Source: Mobula hypostoma (taxonomy: Eukaryota). Taken from it: a stretch of 64,000 nt of DNA. Below are positions 40,038 to 61,311 of this stretch, one piece after another (position 1 is the first letter of the stretch; each line of letters opens with the position of its first letter). Both the position numbers and the translations under genes were made by a program. The stretch is taken from contig NC_086117.1 of the NCBI RefSeq assembly GCF_963921235.1, positions 15,562,001-15,626,000 of the forward strand, read 5' to 3'. The notes beneath the pieces are model-generated. The model was not told the DNA's origin and did no database searches. It was given only the letters and a program-made list of their open reading frames with translations.

Positions 40038-41304
40038 GGATGGGTGAACCAACGATTGACCCAGCAGAGTTTGCTCGCCTAAAGGAAGTCCTCCATCTTA
40101 ACCAGTACACAATCCAGAAGCAGAAGGAAGTCGCTGACCGTCTGCTCACCACTCTCAATGAATTCTCCGTCCCGATACAGCAACCCGGCACCAGTCAACC
40201 TCCTCCCTAGGAGCCCCGGATTCCGGAGCCCGAACACTTCCATGGATCTCCAACCTGACACCCACAACTTCCCACCACAGTGTGTCTTGCACTTCGAGCT
40301 GCAGCCACTTCTGCATTCTGTGGACTGAGCCAAGATTGCTGTCACTGTCTTTCTCTTGACTAGGTGAATTCTGACCTGGATTGCTGCTAACTGGGGCAAT
40401 AACACCATCTTCTGCAAAAAAAAAACACGAGGAATTCACCAGCGAGGGCTTTTGACCATCCAGGGAGTGGAAGGGAGGCAGTGGATTGCATACTTCACCT
40501 GTGTCAAGGTTCATGCTCGACGCTGGATTACACCGTGGAATTCAGGATCCTCGCAGTGGAATGCGGCTGCAACGTGGAAACGCTGCTGATCCAATACCAT
40601 CACAGTTTCGCAGAGTGCAGGGTGCTGTCGACCCTTGAGATGCCCAATGACCCTTGAAAACCTTATCACTCTGGCCCTTCGTGTTGACAAGCATTTTATG
40701 GAACGGCCCTCCAGATCACGAGTCAGAATCCCAGTTCTGTTCCCAGAACCATTTCAGGCAGTGGGACCCTCATCATCAATGCCTACAGAACCCATGCACT
40801 TAGGGAGAGCTCATTTAACAACCCCCTCCACCCCAAGAAATGAGTGTCGGTTGAGAAACAACTTGTGTGCTTACTGCAGGGCCGCCAGTAACCCGCTGTA
40901 TCCAGGAAAACGGCACCACCTCCTTCTCCCAGGAACCAACCTTCCCTGAGGTCACCTGTTCTCCCTCTCCCCTCCTCAGACCCAAGCCATTAATGGCTAC
41001 ATTGATGAAATGCTACAGTATGGCTTCGTTCAACCATCCCAGACCCCAGCCAGCACAGGATTCTATTTTTGTCAAAAGAAAGATGGGGTTCTTCGCCTCT
41101 GCATCGACTACCATGGACTCAACAAAATCACCATTAAGAATAGCTACTCTCTCCTCTAGATAGACTGCATTTGAAACACTCTGCAGGGCCCCAGATCTTC
41201 ACCAAACTGGATCTACAAGCTGACCCGCATCTGCCAGGGGGATGAGTGGAAGACGACGTTCGTAAAGGACCCCCAATACCCTATCTGTCATGTCCGTTCA
41301 GTCC

Positions 41305-44300
41305 TTCGGTGTCTCATATGGGAAATTGAGGAGGTGATAGATAGGAGCTACAGGGAGGTAGTCAACAGGAAATTGTAAGAGGCAGAAAAATAGGTGACTG
41401 CCAGGAGTGGGAAGGGAAATGAGCCGTTCCTGTGGCCATTCCCCTCAATGAGATGGGGAGCCATACCAACCAGGTCTCTGGCATTGAGTCTAGCACTGTG
41501 GCTCAGAAGGGAAGAAGACTGTAGCAGTGATAGGAGATTCCACAGTTAGAGGAGTAGACACAAGACTCTGTGGACACAATAGAGACATCCAGATGGTCTG
41601 TTACCTCCCAGGTGCTAGGTTCAGGGCCCAGGGTGTCTTGGCTCGGGTCCAAGGGGGACATTCTAAAGGGGGACAGTAGGCAGCCAGAGGTTTTGGTACA
41701 TATTGGCACCAATGACCTTGGTAGGAGAAGCGAGGAGGTTCCTGAAGAGAGAATTTGGGGAGCTAGGTAGAAGGCCGAAAAGCAGGACCTCCAGGGTAGC
41801 AATCTCAGGATCGCCGCCTGTGCCACTCACCAGCGAGGGCAGATGAATGCATGGCTGAGAAACCAGTGTAGGGGCACAGTTTCAGGTTACTGGATCATTG
41901 GGATCTCTTCTGGGGAAGATATCACCTGTACAAAAGGCACGATCACACCTGAACCCAAGGGCGACCAATACCCTTGCAGGCAGGTTTGCTAGACTTGTTG
42001 GAGAGGGTTTAAACTAATTTGACGGGGGGATGGGAACTGGAGTGATTGGGCTGAGGATAAGGCTGTTGGTTGACAAGCAGAGGCAGTGTGTAGTGAGACT
42101 CTCAGGAAGGACAGGCAAATGATCGGGCAAAATTGCCATTAGTGGGATGAGTTGCAGTGTAAAATAGGGACAAAGAGATAGAATTTGTAGAATGCCTATG
42201 AGATCACTTTTTAAGGGGCTTGTAGTTAAGCCCACTAGTCAGATGTATCAGTATTACAGTGGAAAAAAGGGAATTATAGAGCCAAAAGAGAGGAGCTGGT
42301 CAAAGTTGATTGGAAGGGAATACTAGCAGGGATGACGGCAGAATGTCATCTGGGAGAAATTTGGAAGGCGCAAAATAGCAGATCCCAAAAATGAAGTAAT
42401 ATTAATATTCTAAAGACAGGATGATACAACTGTATCTGACAAAGGAAGTCAAACTACATAAACGCAAAAGAGAGGGCATATAACAGAGCAAAAATCAGTG
42501 GCAAGTTAGAGGATTGGGAAGCTTTTAAAAACCAACAGAAAGAAACTAAAAAAGCCATAAGGAGGAAGGAGATGAAACAGAAAGGTAAGCTAACCAACAA
42601 TTCCATAAGTGTTTCAGATACATAATGAGTAAAAGGGAGGCAAAAGTAGATATTGGACAGCTGGAAAATGATGATGTAGAAATAGTAATGGGGGGCAAGG
42701 AAATGGTGAACAAATTGAATGAGTGTTTTACACCAGTCATCACTGTGGAAGACTCTAGCTGTACACCGGAAGTTCGAGAGTGTCAGGGGGCAGAAGTGAG
42801 TGCAGTTGCTATCACTGGGGAGCAGGTGCTTGGAAAAATGGAAGTCTGAAGGTAGCTAAGTCACCTAGACCAGATGGACTACACTCCAGGGTTTTGAAAG
42901 AGGTAGCTGACGAGATTGTGGAGGCATCAGTAATCATCTTTCACGAATCACTACGTTCTGAAATGGTTCTGGAGAACTGCAAAATTGCAAAAGTTACTCC
43001 AAGCTTCAAGAAGGGAGAGAGGCAGAAGAAAGGAAATAACAGGCCATTCAGCCTGACCTTAGTGGTTGGGAAGATGTTGGAGTTGATTGTTAAGGATGAG
43101 GTCTCAGAGTACTTAGAGGCGCATGATAAAATAGGCCAACGTCAGGATGGTTTCCTTAAGGGGAAATTTTGCCTGACAAACCTGTTGGAATTCTTCGAGG
43201 AAATAACAAGCAAGATAGACAAAGGTCAATCAGTGAACGTTGAGTACTTGGATTTTCAGAAGGCCTTTGACAAGGTGTTGCACATGAAGCTGCTTAACAG
43301 GATAAGAGTCCATGGTTTTACAGGAAAGATACTAGCATGGATAGAGGATTAGTTGATTGGCAGGAGGCAAAGAGTGGGAATAAAGGGAGCCTTTTCTGGT
43401 TGGCTGTCGGTGACTAGTGATATTCTGCAAGGGTCAGTGGTGGGACTGCTTCTTTTTACGTTGTATGACAATGATTTGGATGATGAAATTGATGACTTTG
43501 TGGCCAAGTTTTCAGACAACACAAAGATAGTTGGAGATGCAGGTAGTGTTGAGGAAGCAGAGAGGCTGCAGAAGGACTTAGACAGATTAGGAAAATGGGC
43601 AAAGAAGTGACAAATAGAATAAAGTATACAGAAGTGTATGGTCATGCACTTTGGTAGAAAGAATAAAAGTATGGATTATTTTCTAAACAGGGAGAAAATT
43701 CAAAATTCCAAGGACCAAGGGGACTCAGGAGTCCTTGTGCAAGATTCCCTAAAGGTTAATTTGCAGGTTGAGTTGGTGGTGAAAAAGGCACATTCAATGT
43801 TAGCTTTCATTTTGAGAGGACTAGAATATAGAAGCAAGATGCATTGCTGAAACTGTATAAGGCACTGGTGAGGCCTCACTTGGAATATTGTAAGCTGTTT
43901 TGGACCCCTTATTTAAGAAAGGATGTGCTCATGTTGGAGAGGGTTCAGAGGAGGTACACGAGGATCATTCCAGGAATGAAAGAAGTATTGTACGAGGAGT
44001 ATTTGATGGCACTGGGCCTTTACTCGCTGGAATTTAGAAGAATGAGGGGGAATCTCATTGAAACTTATCGAATATTGAAAGGCCTATATAGAGTGGATGT
44101 GGAGAGGATGTTTCCTATGGTGGGTAAGTCTAGGACCAGAGGGCACAGACTAAGAAGAGAGGGACGTCCATTTAGAATGGAGATGAAGATGAAATTCTTT
44201 AGCCAGGAAGTGGTGAATCTGTGGAATTCATTGCCACAGGCGGCTGTGGAGGCCAGGTCACATTTAAAGCGGAGGTCGATAGGTTCTTGATTAGGCAGTG

Positions 44301-57030: not shown

Positions 57031-57342
57031 GGCACACACAAAATGCTGGAGGAACTCAGAAAGCCAGACAGCATCTATGGAAAAGAGTACAGTCAATGTT
57101 TTGGGCCAAGACCCTTCAGCAGGACTGGAGAAATAAAGAAGATTTAAAAGGTGGGGAGAGGGGAGAGAAAAACATAAGGTGATAGGTGAAACCAAGAGGG
57201 GGAGGGATGAAGTAAAGAGCTGGGAAGCTGATTTTCTATTGTTTGAAATTTCATAGAAACATAGAAAATAGGTGCAGGAGTAGGCCATTCGGCCCTTCGA
57301 GCCTGCACCGCCATTTATTATGATCATGGCTGATCATCCAAC

Positions 57343-60300
57343 TCAGAACCCTGCCCCAGCCTTCCCTCCATACCCCCTGCTCCCCGTAGCCACAAGGGCC
57401 ATATCTAACTCGCTCTTAAATATAGCCAATGAACTGGCCTCAACTGTTTCCTGTGGCAGAGAATTCCACAGATTCACCACTCTCTGTGTGAAGAAGTTTT
57501 TCCTAATCTCAGTCCTAAAAGGCTTCCCCTTTATCCTCAAACTGTGACCCCTTGTTCTGGACTTCCCCAACATCGGGAACAATCTTCCTGCATCTAGCCT
57601 GTCCAATCCCTTTAGGATTTTATACGTTTCAATCAGATCCCCCCTCAATCTTCTAAATTCCAATGAGTACAAACCCAGTTCATCCAGTCTTTCTTCATAT
57701 GAAAGTCCTGCCATCCCAGGAATCAATCTGGTGAACCTTCTTTGTACTCCCTCTATGGCAAGGATGTCTTTCCTCAGATTAGGGGACCAAAACTGCACAC
57801 AATACTCCAGGTGTGGTCTCACCAAGGCCTTGTACAACTGCAGTAGTACCTCCCTGCTCCTGTACTCGAATCTTCTCGCTATAAATGCCAGCATACCATT
57901 CGCCTTTTTCACCGCCTGCTGTACCTGCATACCCACTTTCAATGACTGGTGTATAATGACACCCAGGTCTCGTTGCACCTCCCCTTTTCCTAATCGGCCA
58001 CCATTCAGATAATAATCTGTTTTCCTACTTTTGCCACCAAAGTGGATAACTTCACATTTATCCACATTAAATTGCATCTGCCATGAATTTGCCCACTCAC
58101 CTAACCTATCCAAGTCACTCTGCATCCTCTTCGCATCCTCCTCACAGCTAACACTGCCACCCAGCTTCGTGTCATCTGCAAACTTGGAGATGCTGCATTT
58201 AATTCCCTCATCCAAGTCATTAATATATATTGTAAACAACTGGGGTCCCAGCACTGAGCCTTGCGGTACCCCACTAGTCACCGCCTGCCATTCTGAAAAG
58301 GTCCCGTTTATTCCCACTCTTTGCTTCCTGTCTGCTAACCAATTCTCCATCCACACCAATACCTTACCCCCAATACCGTGTGCTTTAAGTTTGCACACTA
58401 ATCTCCTGTGTGGAACCTTGTCAAAAGCCTTTTGAAAATCCAGATATACCACATCCACTGGTTCTCCCCTATCCACTCTACTGGTTACATCCTTAAAAAA
58501 TTCTATGAGATTCGTCAGACATGATTTTCCTTTCACAAATCCATGCTGACTTTGTCCGATGATTTCACCGCTTTCCAAATGTGCTGTTATCACATCTTTG
58601 ATAACTGACTCCAGCAGTTTCCCCACCACCGACATTAGGCTAACCGGTCTATAATTCCCCGGTTTCTCTCTCCCTCCTTTTTTAAAAAGTGGGGTTACAT
58701 TAGCCACCCTCCAATCCTCAGGAACTAGTCCAGAATCTAACGAGTTTTGAAAAATTATCACTAATGCATCCACTATTTCTTGGGCTACTTCCTTAAGCAC
58801 TCGAGGATGCAGACCATCTGGCCCTGGGGATTTATCTGCCTTCAATCCCTTCAATTTACCTAACACCACTTCCCTACTAACATGTATTTCGCTCAGTTCC
58901 TCCATCTCACTGGACCCTCTGTCCCCTACTATTTCTGGAAGATTATTTATGTCCTCCTTAGTGAAGACAGAAACAAAGTAATTATTCAATTGGTCTGCCA
59001 TGTCCTTGCTCCCCATAATCAATTCACCTGTTTCTGTCTGTTGGGGACCTACATTTGTCTTTATCAGTCTTTTCCTTTTTACATATCTATAAAAGCTTTT
59101 ACAGTCAGTTTTTATGTTCCCTGCCAGTTTTCTCTCATAATCTTTTTTCCCCTTCCTAATTAAGCCCTTTGTCCTCCTCTGCTGAACTCTGAATTTCTCC
59201 CAGTCCTCAGGTGAGCCACTTTCTCTGGCTAATTTGTATGCTTCTTCTTTGGAATTGATACTATCCCTAATTTCTCTTGTCAGCCACGGGTGCACTACCT
59301 TCCTTGATTTATTCTTTTGCCAAACTGGGATGAACAATTGTAGTTCATCCATGCAACCTTTAAATGCTTGCCATTGCATATCCATCGTCAATCCTTTAAG
59401 TGTCATTTGCCAGTCTATCTTAGCTAATTCACGTCTCATTCCTTCAAAGTTACCCCTCTTTAAGTTCAGAACCTTTGTTTCTGAATTAACTATGTCACTC
59501 TCCATCTTAATGAAGAATTCCACCAAATTATGGTCACTCTTACCCAAGGGGCCTCTCATGACAAGATTGCTAATTAACCCTTCCTCATTGCTCAAAACCC
59601 AGTCCAGAATAGCCTGCTCTCTAGTTGGTTCCTCGACATGTTGGTTCAAAAAACCATCCCACATACATTCCAAGAAATCCTCTTCCTCAGCACCTTTACC
59701 AATTTGGTTCACCCAATCTACATGTAGATTGAAGTCACCCATTATAACTGCTGTTCCTTTATTGCACACATTTCTAATTTCCTGTTTAATACCATCTCCG
59801 ACCTCACTACTACTGTTAGGTGGCCTGTACACAACTCCCACCAGTGTCTCTGCCCCTTAGTGTTACGCAGCTCTACCCATATCGATTCCACATCTTCCCG
59901 GCTTATGTCCTTCCTTTCTATTGCGTTAATCTCTTCTTTAACCAGCAACGCCACCCCACCTTCCCTTCCTTCATGTCTATCCCTCCTGAATATTGAATAT
60001 CCCTGAACGTTGAGCTCCCATCCTTGGTCACCCTGGAGCCATGTCTCTGTGATCCCAACTATATCATAATCATTAATAACAATCTGCACTTTCAATTCAT
60101 CCACCTTATTACGAATGCTCCTTGCATTGACACACAAAGCCTTCAGGTGCTCTTTTACAACTCTCTTAGCCCTTATACAATTATGTTGAAAAGTGGCCCT
60201 TTTTAATGCTTGCCCTGGATTTGTCGGCCTGCCACTTTTACTCTTCTCCTTAGTACTTTTTGCTTCTACCCTCACTTTACACCCCTCTGTCTCTCTGCAC

Positions 60301-60392
60301 TGGTTCCCATCCCCCTGTTGTGAACTAACCTCCTCACGCCTAGCCTCTTTAATCTGATTCCCACCCCCCAACCATTCTAGTTTAAAGTCACC
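57343..60392 (-). pseudogene. CR1 ORF2: APE endonuclease plus reverse transcriptase, one frameshift near 59850
   Basis: NARSI, ITETW, GDFN, SDH (endonuclease); KSPGPDG, DFQKAFD, GVPQGSVLGP, FADD (RT); 832 uninterrupted codons. Confidence 0.95.
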
Positions 60393-61311
60393 TCAGTAGC
60401 CCTCGCTAATCTCCCTGCCAGGATATTGGTCCCCCTAGGATTCAAGTGTAACCCGTCCTTTTTGTACAGGTCGCGCCTGCGCCAAAAGAGGTCCCAATGA
60501 TCCAAAAACTTGAATCCCTGCCCCCGCTCCAATCCCTCAGCCACGCATTTATCCTCCACCTCATCGCATTCCTACTCTCACTGTCGCGTGGCACAGGCAG
60601 TAATCCCGAGATTACTACCTTTGCGGTCCTTTTTCTCAACTCCCTTCCTAGCTCCCTATATTCCCCTTTCAGGACCTCATCCCTTTTCCTACCTATGTCA
60701 TTGGTACCTATATGTACCACGACCTCTGGCTCCTCGCCCTCCCACTTCAGGATATCTTGGACACAATCAGAAATATCCCGGACCCTGGCACCAGGGAGGC
60801 AAACTACCATCCGGGTCTCTGGACTGCGTCCACAGAATCGCCTATCTGACCCCCTTACTATTGAGTCCCCTATCACAACTGCCCTCCTCTTCCTTGCCCT
60901 ACCCTTCTGAGCTACAGGGCCAGACTCTGTGCCGGAGGCACGGCCACTGTCGCTTCCCCCGGGTAAGCTGTTCCCCCCAACAGTACTCAAACAGGAGTAC
61001 CTATTGTTAAGGGGCACAGCCACCGGGGTACTCCCTATTACCTGACTCTTCCCCTTCCCCCTCCTAACCGTGACCCACTTGTCTGCCTCCCGTGGCCCCG
61101 GCGTGACCACCTGCCTGCAACTCCTCTCTATCAACTCCTCACTCTCCCTGACCAGACGAAGGTCATCGAGCTGCAGCTCCAGTTCTGTAACGCGGTCCCT
61201 TAGGAGCTGCATCTCGATGCACTTGGCGCAGATGTAGACGTCCTTGAGGCTTGGAGACTCCAAGGCCTCCCACATCCGACACCGAGAACAGCAAACTGCC
61301 CTCACACTCAT
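60377..61311 (-). pseudogene. CR1 ORF1: zinc finger / coiled coil plus SGNH esterase, one frameshift near 60525
   Basis: CSRC...CAKC, LRDRVTELELQLDDL, VIGDSIVRG, VHIGTND, then DGLHLN in the shifted frame ending ...TLN*. Confidence 0.9.

What the first reader, a model, noticed from the sequence alone, without database searches (positions are those of the whole stretch)
60330..60395. Candidate -1 programmed ribosomal frameshift joining ORF1 and ORF2 of a CR1 LINE
Seen: on the minus strand ORF1 ends ACT TTA AAC TAG, placing the heptamer T_TTA_AAC (60386-60380) in X_XXY_YYZ register just before the stop. ORF2 is exactly the -1 frame (TTT AAA CTA GAA TGG TTG GGG GGT GGG AAT...). That frame is closed by TGA at 60395-60393, so the overlap is about 5 codons and holds little besides the heptamer. 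ORF2 has no Met until IMGDFN in mid-endonuclease, after the NARS and ITETW motifs; the listed starts are TTG and GTG. A G-rich tract (TGGTTGGGGGGTGGGAATCAG) begins about 5 nt downstream and recurs about 57 nt later. Established: U_UUA_AAC is the coronavirus ORF1a/1b slippery site, whereas L1 and SART1 ORF2 are reported to use termination/reinitiation. Inference: this CR1 makes a Gag-Pol-like ORF1-ORF2 fusion. I cannot check whether this has already been proposed for CR1.
Basis: partly seen in the sequence, partly recalled or inferred. Interest (0 to 1): 0.85.

Follow-up and report, generated by a model that had tools for sequence, protein, structure and literature searches.

The report
Conserved ribosome-slip site in CR1 LINE
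At the junction of the two genes of this shark jumping gene sits a classic ribosome slip signal that stays letter-for-letter identical in relatives from sharks, frogs and birds, so this LINE family probably makes its copying enzyme by a programmed -1 frameshift, which has not been shown for any LINE.

Summary
On the minus strand ORF1 ends ACT TTA AAC TAG, with the heptamer T_TTA_AAC at 60386-60380. ORF2 lies in the -1 frame, which is closed by TGA two codons upstream of the heptamer, and it has no Met before IMGDFN.

This copy is dead: each ORF has one frame break.

What matters is conservation.
- In 16 lineage representatives (two copies in this window, elasmobranch, frog-type and bird-type CR1s, 25-90% ORF1 identity), TTTAAAC plus TA(G/A) is invariant. 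Flanking sequence is only 30-45% identical.
- The codon before Leu always ends in T, although it encodes eight different amino acids.
- A crustacean/marine clade has G_GGA_AAC TAG instead, a second canonical slippery heptamer, again with ORF2 in the -1 frame.
- A G5-6 N G3-4 tract about 10 nt downstream is also conserved at the nucleotide level.

No Watson-Crick stem-loop or pseudoknot is supported, and a two-layer G-quadruplex is only possible.

No AUG is conserved. Some relatives do have an AUG or near-cognate codon right after the stop, so termination-reinitiation is not excluded.

I found no description of this in the papers searched.

The same scan noted the same signal on two other pieces of this genome (s1-142001, s1-142500).

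Most likely it is a real, ancient -1 frameshift site (about 0.7), untested experimentally.

The parts
60377..61311 (-). ORF1 of the CR1 element: zinc-finger-like N-terminus, coiled coil, SGNH/GDSL esterase. One frame break between 60523 and 60520 in this copy.
   Evidence: Translations. Pfam PF13472 and PF17182. 108 homologues, the best 92% identical and ending ...ATEVTLN. Frame-break coordinates. Other copies differ in length by one letter at 60520.
60380..60386 (-). Slippery heptamer T_TTA_AAC in X_XXY_YYZ register of the ORF1 frame.
   Evidence: Invariant in 16 lineage representatives.
60377..60379 (-). ORF1 stop codon TAG, directly after the heptamer.
   Evidence: The stop is TAG or TAA in all 20 lineages compared.
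60393..60395 (-). TGA that closes the -1 (ORF2) frame two codons upstream of the heptamer.
   Evidence: upstream stop two codons before the heptamer.
60354..60374 (-). Conserved G-tract (GG TT GGGGGG T GGG AAT...). G6 at 60369-60364 and G3 at 60362-60360. Candidate stimulator; a two-layer G-quadruplex is possible.
   Evidence: 78-80% identity across lineages against about 30% for its surroundings. G-quadruplex predicted. G4Hunter score 1.52.
60300..60317 (-). Second, similar G-tract (CAGGGGGATGGGAACCAG), 57 nt after the first.
   Evidence: L084-type relatives carry only one such tract.
57343..60392 (-). ORF2 (AP-endonuclease and reverse transcriptase) in the -1 frame. It is open from just upstream of the heptamer. 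One frame break at about 59847-59844 in this copy.
   Evidence: Pfam PF03372, PF14529 and PF00078.
57252..57309 (-). 3' end of the element: hairpin arms 57309-57302 and 57278-57271, then a (TTTCTATG)x2 tail at 57267-57252.
42008..42034 (+). Second, decayed CR1 copy of another subfamily (about 66% identical). Same heptamer at 42008-42014, stop TAA at 42015-42017, G-tract at 42024-42034.

Best explanation
The site is the fossil, in a dead copy, of a programmed -1 ribosomal frameshift signal that esterase-type CR1 LINEs use to express ORF2.

Proposed mechanism:
- A ribosome translating ORF1 reaches U_UUA_AAC with tRNA-Leu in the P site and tRNA-Asn in the A site.
- In a minority of passages both tRNAs slip back one base, to UUU and AAA.
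- Translation then continues in the ORF2 frame from CUA. It bypasses the UAG that follows directly.
- The product is an ORF1-ORF2 fusion with the predicted junction ...TLN-LEWLGGG... All other ribosomes stop and make ORF1 protein alone.

This would fix a low ORF2:ORF1 ratio and tie the enzyme physically to the ORF1 protein and to its own RNA, like Gag-Pol.

The conserved G-tract about 10 nt downstream is the likely stimulator, acting as a G-quadruplex or as a protein-binding site at the mRNA entry channel.

Shown: the heptamer, its register, the -1 frame relation, deep nucleotide-level conservation, and the conserved G-tract. Inferred: that ribosomes slip here, how often, the fusion protein, and the role of the G-tract.
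For: (a) Local anatomy is as described.

(b) TTTAAAC+TA(G/A) is 100% conserved in 16 lineage representatives. Between elasmobranch-type and bird-type elements the identities are:
- 24-78 nt upstream: 39-44%
- spacer: 29%
- further downstream: 32%

(c) The first heptamer base is the third base of codons for Thr, Gly, Asp, Ala, Ile, Cys, Ser and Val, and is always T. Background usage is TTA 11% of Leu, AAC 41% of Asn and NNT 24%. That gives about 1% per independent lineage by chance.

(d) A crustacean/marine clade has G_GGA_AAC TAG in four loci. The first G is kept after Gln, Val, Ala and Lys codons, and ORF2 is again in the -1 frame. The X_XXY_YYZ pattern is kept while its letters change.

(e) At the protein level, 151 ORF1 relatives keep the C-terminal block. 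Of these, 81 end in LN and 21 in GN, most often exactly 26 residues after DGxH.

(f) In every locus that reaches the endonuclease, the NARS motif is continuous with the heptamer in the -1 frame. That frame is closed 1-8 codons upstream in most.

(g) The first Met in ORF2 varies from codon 3 to 197 and often lies inside the endonuclease.

(h) The G-tract is 78-80% conserved. In nearly all vertebrate lineages compared it uses GGG for both Gly codons, so the constraint is on nucleotides.

(i) Contigs of a probable RNA run span the junction with 2 differences and no length change at the heptamer.
Against: - No stable or conserved Watson-Crick stem-loop or pseudoknot follows the site. Minimum free energies are no better than those of shuffled sequences (z = +0.3 to +1.7 in most). 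RNAalifold finds 0 pairs in the elasmobranch set and -1.8 kcal/mol in the bird set.
- The predicted two-layer G-quadruplex is no better than in shuffles of this G-rich sequence. It is absent in three of the four crustacean-type loci.
- Several relatives have AUG, GUG, AUU or UUG 1-3 codons after the stop, including a SART1-like UAAUG in L084. These would suit termination-reinitiation.
- A teleost esterase-ORF1 family manages without a heptamer and without an AUG.
- There is no protein, ribosome-profiling or reporter evidence.
- This particular copy cannot express either ORF intact.
Confidence: 0.7

Rival explanations
1. Termination-reinitiation or non-AUG initiation. Ribosomes finish ORF1 at UAG. 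Some 40S subunits stay on the RNA and restart 1-3 codons downstream in the -1 frame at AUG or a near-cognate codon (UUG at 60371-60369 in this copy). They make a separate ORF2 protein, as reported for SART1 (UAAUG) and human L1. The G-tract would hold or pause the ribosome.
For: - L084 has UAAUG. L001, L016, L040 and L063 have an AUG 2-5 nt after the stop. Other lineages have AUU, GUG or UUG there.
- The ORF2 frame opens only at the junction, which fits restart as well as slippage.
- Reviews name reinitiation as the known route in other LINEs (PMC3708506; PMC3894237).
- A teleost relative without a heptamer also lacks an AUG.
Against: - It does not explain why seven bases upstream of the stop are invariant at synonymous positions, including the third base of a variable codon.
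- It does not explain why a distant clade carries another heptamer of the same X_XXY_YYZ form.
- The start-like codon is not conserved in position or identity. The largest bird subfamily has UCG there.
Confidence: 0.2
2. Both routes operate, or different CR1 lineages use different ones. The heptamer would give a rare fusion protein, and restart would give free ORF2 protein.
For: An invariant heptamer coexists with AUG or near-cognate codons directly after the stop in several lineages.
Against: No direct evidence. It is less parsimonious than a single route.
Confidence: 0.06
3. The frame change happens in the nucleic acid, by transcriptional slippage, editing or splicing, not on the ribosome.
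For: None found.
Against: - T3A3 is too short a run for polymerase slippage.
- Contigs of probable RNA runs show no length change at the heptamer. The only listed length changes are at 60520 and 60640.
- No consistent joint lies at the junction.
Confidence: 0.02
4. Coincidence, or a constraint unrelated to translation, such as a C-terminal Leu-Asn needed by the ORF1 protein.
For: Leu-Asn is conserved at the protein level.
Against: A protein constraint does not fix TTA among six Leu codons, AAC over AAT, or the T of the preceding variable codon. It also does not predict G_GGA_AAC in the other clade.
Confidence: 0.02

Closest known systems
Coronavirus ORF1a/1b -1 frameshift signal (U_UUA_AAC plus pseudoknot; IBV, SARS-CoV)
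   Same: The heptamer and register are identical, and the downstream ORF lies in the -1 frame. The expected mechanism is tandem slippage of tRNA-Leu and tRNA-Asn (my own knowledge; heptamer seen).
   Different: No pseudoknot or stem-loop follows the site; a short G-tract follows instead. The 0-frame stop follows the heptamer directly. The host is a LINE, not an RNA virus.
Luteovirus/polerovirus and dianthovirus -1 frameshift sites (G_GGA_AAC in BWYV/PLRV; BYDV and RCNMV, where the heptamer is directly followed by the stop codon)
   Same: G_GGA_AAC is the heptamer of the crustacean-type CR1 clade. A heptamer placed immediately before the 0-frame stop is the arrangement I recall for BYDV and RCNMV (my own knowledge, not checked here).
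   Different: Those viruses rely on compact pseudoknots or long-range base pairing. Nothing comparable was detected here.
Gag-Pol -1 frameshifting of retroviruses and LTR retrotransposons
   Same: An RNA-binding structural protein and a reverse transcriptase lie in overlapping frames. A slip would set their ratio and fuse them (PMC5009743).
   Different: CR1 is a non-LTR element with no protease to release the enzyme. The overlap is only about 5 codons.
ORF2 translation in other LINEs: SART1 UAAUG coupling and human L1 unconventional termination/reinitiation
   Same: The RNA is bicistronic, ORF2 starts at the ORF1 stop, and a downstream element is involved (PMC3708506; PMC3894237).
   Different: Those cases need no slippery heptamer. 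Here the heptamer is the most conserved feature and no start codon is conserved.
Protein-stimulated frameshifting (arterivirus nsp1-beta/PCBP on a C-rich motif; cardiovirus 2A)
   Same: A short, unstructured, conserved motif lies about 10-14 nt downstream of the shift site (my own knowledge). The G-tract here lies 10 nt downstream in most lineages.
   Different: No binding protein is known for the CR1 G-tract. This is an analogy only.

Membership tests
Canonical eukaryotic -1 programmed ribosomal frameshift signal | X_XXY_YYZ slippery heptamer in register with the upstream frame | tested here: met
   T_TTA_AAC at 60386-60380 in the ORF1 frame. G_GGA_AAC in the distant clade.
Canonical eukaryotic -1 programmed ribosomal frameshift signal | Downstream ORF in the -1 frame, open across the site and closed shortly upstream | tested here: met
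   the NARS endonuclease motif is continuous with the heptamer in the -1 frame in all loci that reach it. The upstream stop lies 1-8 codons before the heptamer in most.
Canonical eukaryotic -1 programmed ribosomal frameshift signal | Stable stem-loop or pseudoknot 5-9 nt downstream | tested here: not met
   Minimum free energy is no better than for shuffled sequences. RNAalifold finds 0 pairs and -1.8 kcal/mol. Pseudoknots were not searched with a dedicated tool.
Canonical eukaryotic -1 programmed ribosomal frameshift signal | An alternative downstream stimulator (G-quadruplex or protein-binding motif) at the right spacing | tested here: inconclusive
   The conserved G5-6 N G3-4 tract starts about 10 nt after the heptamer. 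A two-layer G-quadruplex starting 6 nt after the heptamer is predicted in winA, L084 and L086, and G-quadruplexes are also predicted in L009, L016 and L083 (three-layer), but it is no better than in shuffles. G4Hunter scores are 1.2-2.3 in vertebrate lineages and 0.7 in three crustacean-type loci.
Canonical eukaryotic -1 programmed ribosomal frameshift signal | Conservation of the heptamer at synonymous positions among diverged relatives | tested here: met
Canonical eukaryotic -1 programmed ribosomal frameshift signal | A trans-frame protein product, or measured frameshift efficiency | not testable with these tools
   No proteomic, ribosome-profiling or reporter data were available.
CR1-clade LINE (non-LTR retrotransposon) with esterase-type ORF1 | ORF1 with a zinc-finger-like N-terminus and an SGNH/GDSL esterase domain | tested here: met
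   Pfam PF13472 (36.4 bits, above the cut-off) and PF17182. Cys-rich N-terminus and homologues.
CR1-clade LINE (non-LTR retrotransposon) with esterase-type ORF1 | ORF2 with an AP-endonuclease and a reverse transcriptase | tested here: met
   PF03372, PF14529 and PF00078.
CR1-clade LINE (non-LTR retrotransposon) with esterase-type ORF1 | 3' end with a hairpin and a short tandem-repeat tail instead of poly(A) | tested here: met
   Hairpin arms 57309-57302 and 57278-57271, and (TTTCTATG)x2 at 57267-57252. That this is the CR1 hallmark is from my own knowledge.
CR1-clade LINE (non-LTR retrotransposon) with esterase-type ORF1 | Placement within the CR1 clade by reverse-transcriptase phylogeny | not tested
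   No tree was built. The assignment rests on ORF1 type, 3' end and bird CR1-like relatives.
Stop-start termination-reinitiation (SART1 type) | A start codon overlapping or abutting the ORF1 stop | tested here: not met
   This copy and its family have CTA GAA TGG TTG after the heptamer and no AUG. The feature is met in the relative L084 (UAAUG) and in some bird lineages.

The most novel reading that the evidence does not exclude
Programmed -1 frameshifting is the ancestral way esterase-type CR1 LINEs across bilaterians, from crustaceans to sharks and birds, make an ORF1-ORF2 fusion. It would be driven not by an RNA pseudoknot but by a short G-tract at the ribosome's entry channel. That tract would act as a G-quadruplex or as a binding site for the element's own ORF1 protein or a host G-tract-binding protein. 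ORF2 synthesis would then be switched on in cis once ORF1 protein has accumulated on its own RNA.
Probability: 0.25. Interest if true: 0.9.

Novelty: new variant of a known kind. Interest (0 to 1): 0.8.

Why it matters
How LINEs translate ORF2 from a bicistronic RNA is a long-standing open question. Two reviews on the subject call the mechanism unclear and do not mention frameshifting at all (PMC3708506; PMC3894237). The large recoding review lists only HeT-A and TART among non-LTR elements (PMC5009743).

CR1 is the dominant LINE of birds, reptiles and many fishes. A conserved canonical slip site would:
- give a concrete, easily testable mechanism;
- explain cis-preference and the low ORF2:ORF1 ratio by a Gag-Pol-like fusion;
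- change how CR1 ORF2 is annotated (it does not start at a Met);
- add a cellular -1 frameshift signal that apparently lacks a classical RNA structure.

Tried and rejected
- **Stem-loop or pseudoknot downstream.** Single-sequence folds of 90-120 nt in 18 lineages and two RNAalifold runs gave nothing conserved.
- **G-quadruplex as a proven stimulator.** It is predicted in several vertebrate lineages but is no better than in shuffles, and it is absent in most crustacean-type loci. I keep it only as a possibility.
- **Per-position variation among genomic copies.** In the contigs laid, none of the listed variants with a share of 10% or more fell within 60355-60401. However, 91 variants were not shown, and decay after insertion is neutral, so this adds little.
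- **RNA evidence.** Only assembled contigs of runs guessed to be RNA were available. They show that the junction is present, not that it is translated.
- **More loci from viral contigs.** None found.
- **Literature.** Ten searches found no paper linking CR1 with a slippery heptamer. PMC1190309 (SART1) is not held. Older subscription papers on chicken and turtle CR1 could not be read, so a prior mention cannot be excluded.

Full report
**1. What is in the window**

The minus strand from about 61311 to 57252 carries a CR1-type LINE.

- ORF1 starts at ATG 61311. It has a Cys-rich N-terminus, a coiled-coil-like middle and an SGNH/GDSL esterase domain (Pfam PF13472 and PF17182).
- ORF2 has AP-endonuclease and reverse-transcriptase domains (PF03372, PF14529 and PF00078).
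- The element ends with a hairpin (arms 57309-57302 and 57278-57271) and two TTTCTATG units (57267-57252).

The copy is dead.

- ORF1 changes frame between 60523 and 60520, so the mechanical 297-aa ORF stops at TGA 60444-60442.
- ORF2 changes frame at about 59847-59844.
- Other genomic copies differ in length by one letter at 60520, so the ORF1 break belongs to this copy or to a subset of copies.
- Intact relatives, such as a 311-aa protein 92% identical to this ORF1 (P0001), end ...ATEVTLN. They confirm that ACT TTA AAC TAG is the true ORF1 end.

**2. The observation**

- Heptamer TTTAAAC at 60386-60380 in X_XXY_YYZ register.
- TAG at 60379-60377.
- ORF2 in the -1 frame (TTT AAA CTA GAA TGG TTG GGG GGT GGG AAT), closed upstream by TGA at 60395-60393.
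- No Met before VIMGDFN.
- A G-tract at 60374-60354, repeated in similar form at 60317-60300.
- TTTAAAC occurs once on this strand of the element.

**3. Conservation**

A second, decayed CR1 of another subfamily (about 66% identical) lies on the plus strand at about 41300-44300. It has GGT TTA AAC TAA at 42006-42017, followed by GGGGGG AT GGG.

A protein search with ORF1 found 108 relatives in elasmobranchs, Xenopus, a turtle and many unnamed contigs. Almost all complete ones end in Leu-Asn, even at 25-35% identity.

I fetched DNA for diverse relatives: plus 80 loci from a metagenome scan that turned out to be mostly bird-type CR1 copies from one sample.

In 16 lineage representatives TTTAAAC followed by TA(G/A) is invariant. 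Identity between elasmobranch-type and bird-type elements is as follows:

| Region | Identity |
|---|---|
| 78 nt upstream of the heptamer | 39-44% |
| Heptamer | 100% |
| Stop codon | 83% |
| 7-nt spacer | 29% |
| G-tract | 79% |
| Further downstream | about 32% |

The first T of the heptamer is the third base of codons for Thr, Gly, Asp, Ala, Ile, Cys, Ser and Val. In these ORF1s TTA is 11% of Leu codons, AAC is 41% of Asn codons and 24% of codons end in T. A Leu-Asn end would therefore spell the heptamer by chance about once in a hundred lineages.

The copies that deviate do so by single bases. All come from the decayed bird-type copies of the metagenome scan or, like L088, carry a disrupted ORF2.

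**4. A second heptamer**

A more distant clade consists of marine metagenome contigs and a snow-crab protein, about 31% identical to the shark ORF1. It ends in Gln/Val/Ala/Lys-Gly-Asn.

All four loci fetched read G_GGA_AAC TAG. The first G is kept whatever the preceding amino acid, and ORF2 is again continuous in the -1 frame.

The letters differ but the X_XXY_YYZ form, the A-site codon AAC and the adjacent TAG are kept. This is what a slip site predicts and what no other model I could think of predicts.

A profile search of 1.84 billion representatives supports the breadth of this pattern. Of 151 relatives that keep the C-terminal block:
- 81 end in LN;
- 21 end in GN;
- 2 end in KN, which would fit A_AAA_AAC but was not checked at DNA level.

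**5. The ORF2 frame and start codons**

In every locus that reaches the endonuclease, the NARS motif lies in the -1 frame continuous with the heptamer. That frame is closed 1-8 codons upstream in most loci.

The first Met varies.
- Codon 3-4 in some lineages: L084, where it forms UAAUG with the stop, and L001, L016, L040, L063.
- Codon 22 in many bird copies.
- Codon 43 or later, inside the endonuclease after the catalytic Asn, in others.
- Codon 197 of that reading frame in this copy, which lies after the frame break. In the true ORF2 frame the first Met is the one in VIMGDFN.

So no AUG is conserved. Even so, AUG or near-cognate codons (AUU, GUG, UUG) often sit within three codons of the stop.

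A teleost (Colossoma) esterase-ORF1 family has neither a heptamer nor an AUG, and it has a spacer of about 170 nt. LINEs can clearly express ORF2 without an AUG by other means, so the missing AUG is not in itself evidence for slippage.

**6. The downstream element**

The conserved tract is G5-6, one or two other bases, then G3-4. It starts 10 nt after the heptamer in most lineages and 6-7 nt after it in L083 and L082.

In the ORF2 frame it encodes Gly-x-Gly, and in nearly all vertebrate lineages compared both Gly codons are GGG. The constraint is therefore on the RNA, not only on the protein.

No Watson-Crick structure is supported.
- Folds of the following 90-120 nt are no more stable than shuffled sequences.
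- RNAalifold finds no pairs in the elasmobranch-type set and only -1.8 kcal/mol in the bird set.

With G-quadruplexes allowed, a two-layer quadruplex (GG NN GG G GG NN GG) starting 6 nt after the heptamer is predicted in this copy, L084 and L086. Quadruplexes are also predicted in L009 and L016, and a three-layer one in L083. They are no better than in shuffles of these G-rich sequences.

G4Hunter scores are 1.2-2.3 in vertebrate lineages and about 0.7 in three of the four crustacean-type loci. The nature of the stimulator is therefore open. A G-quadruplex or a protein bound to the tract at the mRNA entry channel are the two ideas that fit the spacing.

**7. Reads**

The family is extremely abundant in two organisms. 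About 30,000 contigs of one run were laid, and thousands of them are 99% alike, so it was active recently.

A 133-nt contig of a run guessed to be RNA spans 60303-60435 with two differences. No length change at the heptamer is listed in any run. This speaks against slippage at the nucleic-acid level. It says nothing about translation.

**8. Interpretation**

The best explanation is a programmed -1 ribosomal frameshift at U_UUA_AAC. It would yield an ORF1-ORF2 fusion with the predicted junction ...TLN-LEW...

I put this at about 0.7. The comparative signature is the classical one used to identify frameshift sites, and it includes a swap between two canonical heptamers. Against that, there is no recognised stimulatory structure and no experimental evidence.

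Termination-reinitiation at a nearby AUG or near-cognate codon stays at about 0.2, plus 0.06 for both routes operating. Nucleic-acid-level frame change and coincidence are each about 0.02.

**9. Comparison with what is known**

- The heptamer is that of coronaviruses. The alternative one is that of poleroviruses.
- A heptamer abutting the stop recalls BYDV and RCNMV (my own knowledge).
- The logic is that of Gag-Pol.

Within LINEs, the routes described in the papers I could read are:
- SART1 stop-start coupling;
- L1 unconventional reinitiation;
- 2A-like peptides;
- a frameshift within HeT-A gag.

None of ten full-text searches found a paper linking CR1 to a slippery heptamer. The 1990s papers on chicken and turtle CR1 are not in the library, so an early remark cannot be excluded.

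I class the finding as a new variant of a known kind.

**10. Earlier notes of this scan**

The same signal was noted on two other pieces of this genome. One of those was followed up with the same conclusion from eight copies (s1-142001, s1-142500). The second copy in this window was also noted (s1-144816).

I tested the claim independently here and extended it to frog-type, bird-type and crustacean-type elements.

Noticed in passing
window 41300-44300 (+); junction 42008-42034: A second, heavily decayed CR1 of another subfamily, with an internal deletion, keeps the same heptamer, a TAA stop and the G-tract. In this copy the -1 frame hits a stop four codons after the heptamer.
   Followed up: yes
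window 60374-60354 and 60317-60300 (-): This family carries the G-tract twice (ORF2-frame GGGNQ and GDGNQ). L084-type relatives have one copy. About 54 nt next to the junction therefore look tandemly duplicated in this family.
   Followed up: partly
L089 and L090 (Colossoma macropomum), around 2433: A teleost esterase-ORF1 LINE family has no slippery heptamer. It has a TGA stop, a spacer of about 170 nt with stops in all frames, and an ORF2 without any AUG before the endonuclease. It must use a different ORF2 expression route.
   Followed up: partly
all 20 junctions compared: The stop after the heptamer is TAG or TAA and never TGA, so the first -1-frame codon is always CUA. No explanation.
   Followed up: no
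P0198, P0257: Two ORF1 clusters end in Ser-Lys-Asn, which would fit a third canonical heptamer, A_AAA_AAC.
   Followed up: no
P0026, P0030, P0050, P0051, P0078, P0082: CR1 ORF1 sequences are filed in public databases under misleading names or hosts. Examples: SGNH/GDSL hydrolase of Pseudomonas aeruginosa, 40S ribosomal protein S24 isoform of Pristis, TMEM204 and ABHD14A-like isoforms of Mobula, and a protein of the fluke Protopolystoma. These look like contamination or transposon-gene chimeric models.
   Followed up: no
L002-L081, contigs Ga0065711_*: One 'metagenome' holds dozens of long contigs (up to 79 kb) with bird-type CR1 copies, so it is largely host DNA.
   Followed up: no
window 57252-57309 (-): The 3' end of the element has an 8-bp hairpin stem with an inner GGCC/GGCC stem, and a (TTTCTATG)x2 tail. 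This is the usual recognition module of stringent-type LINEs.
   Followed up: partly
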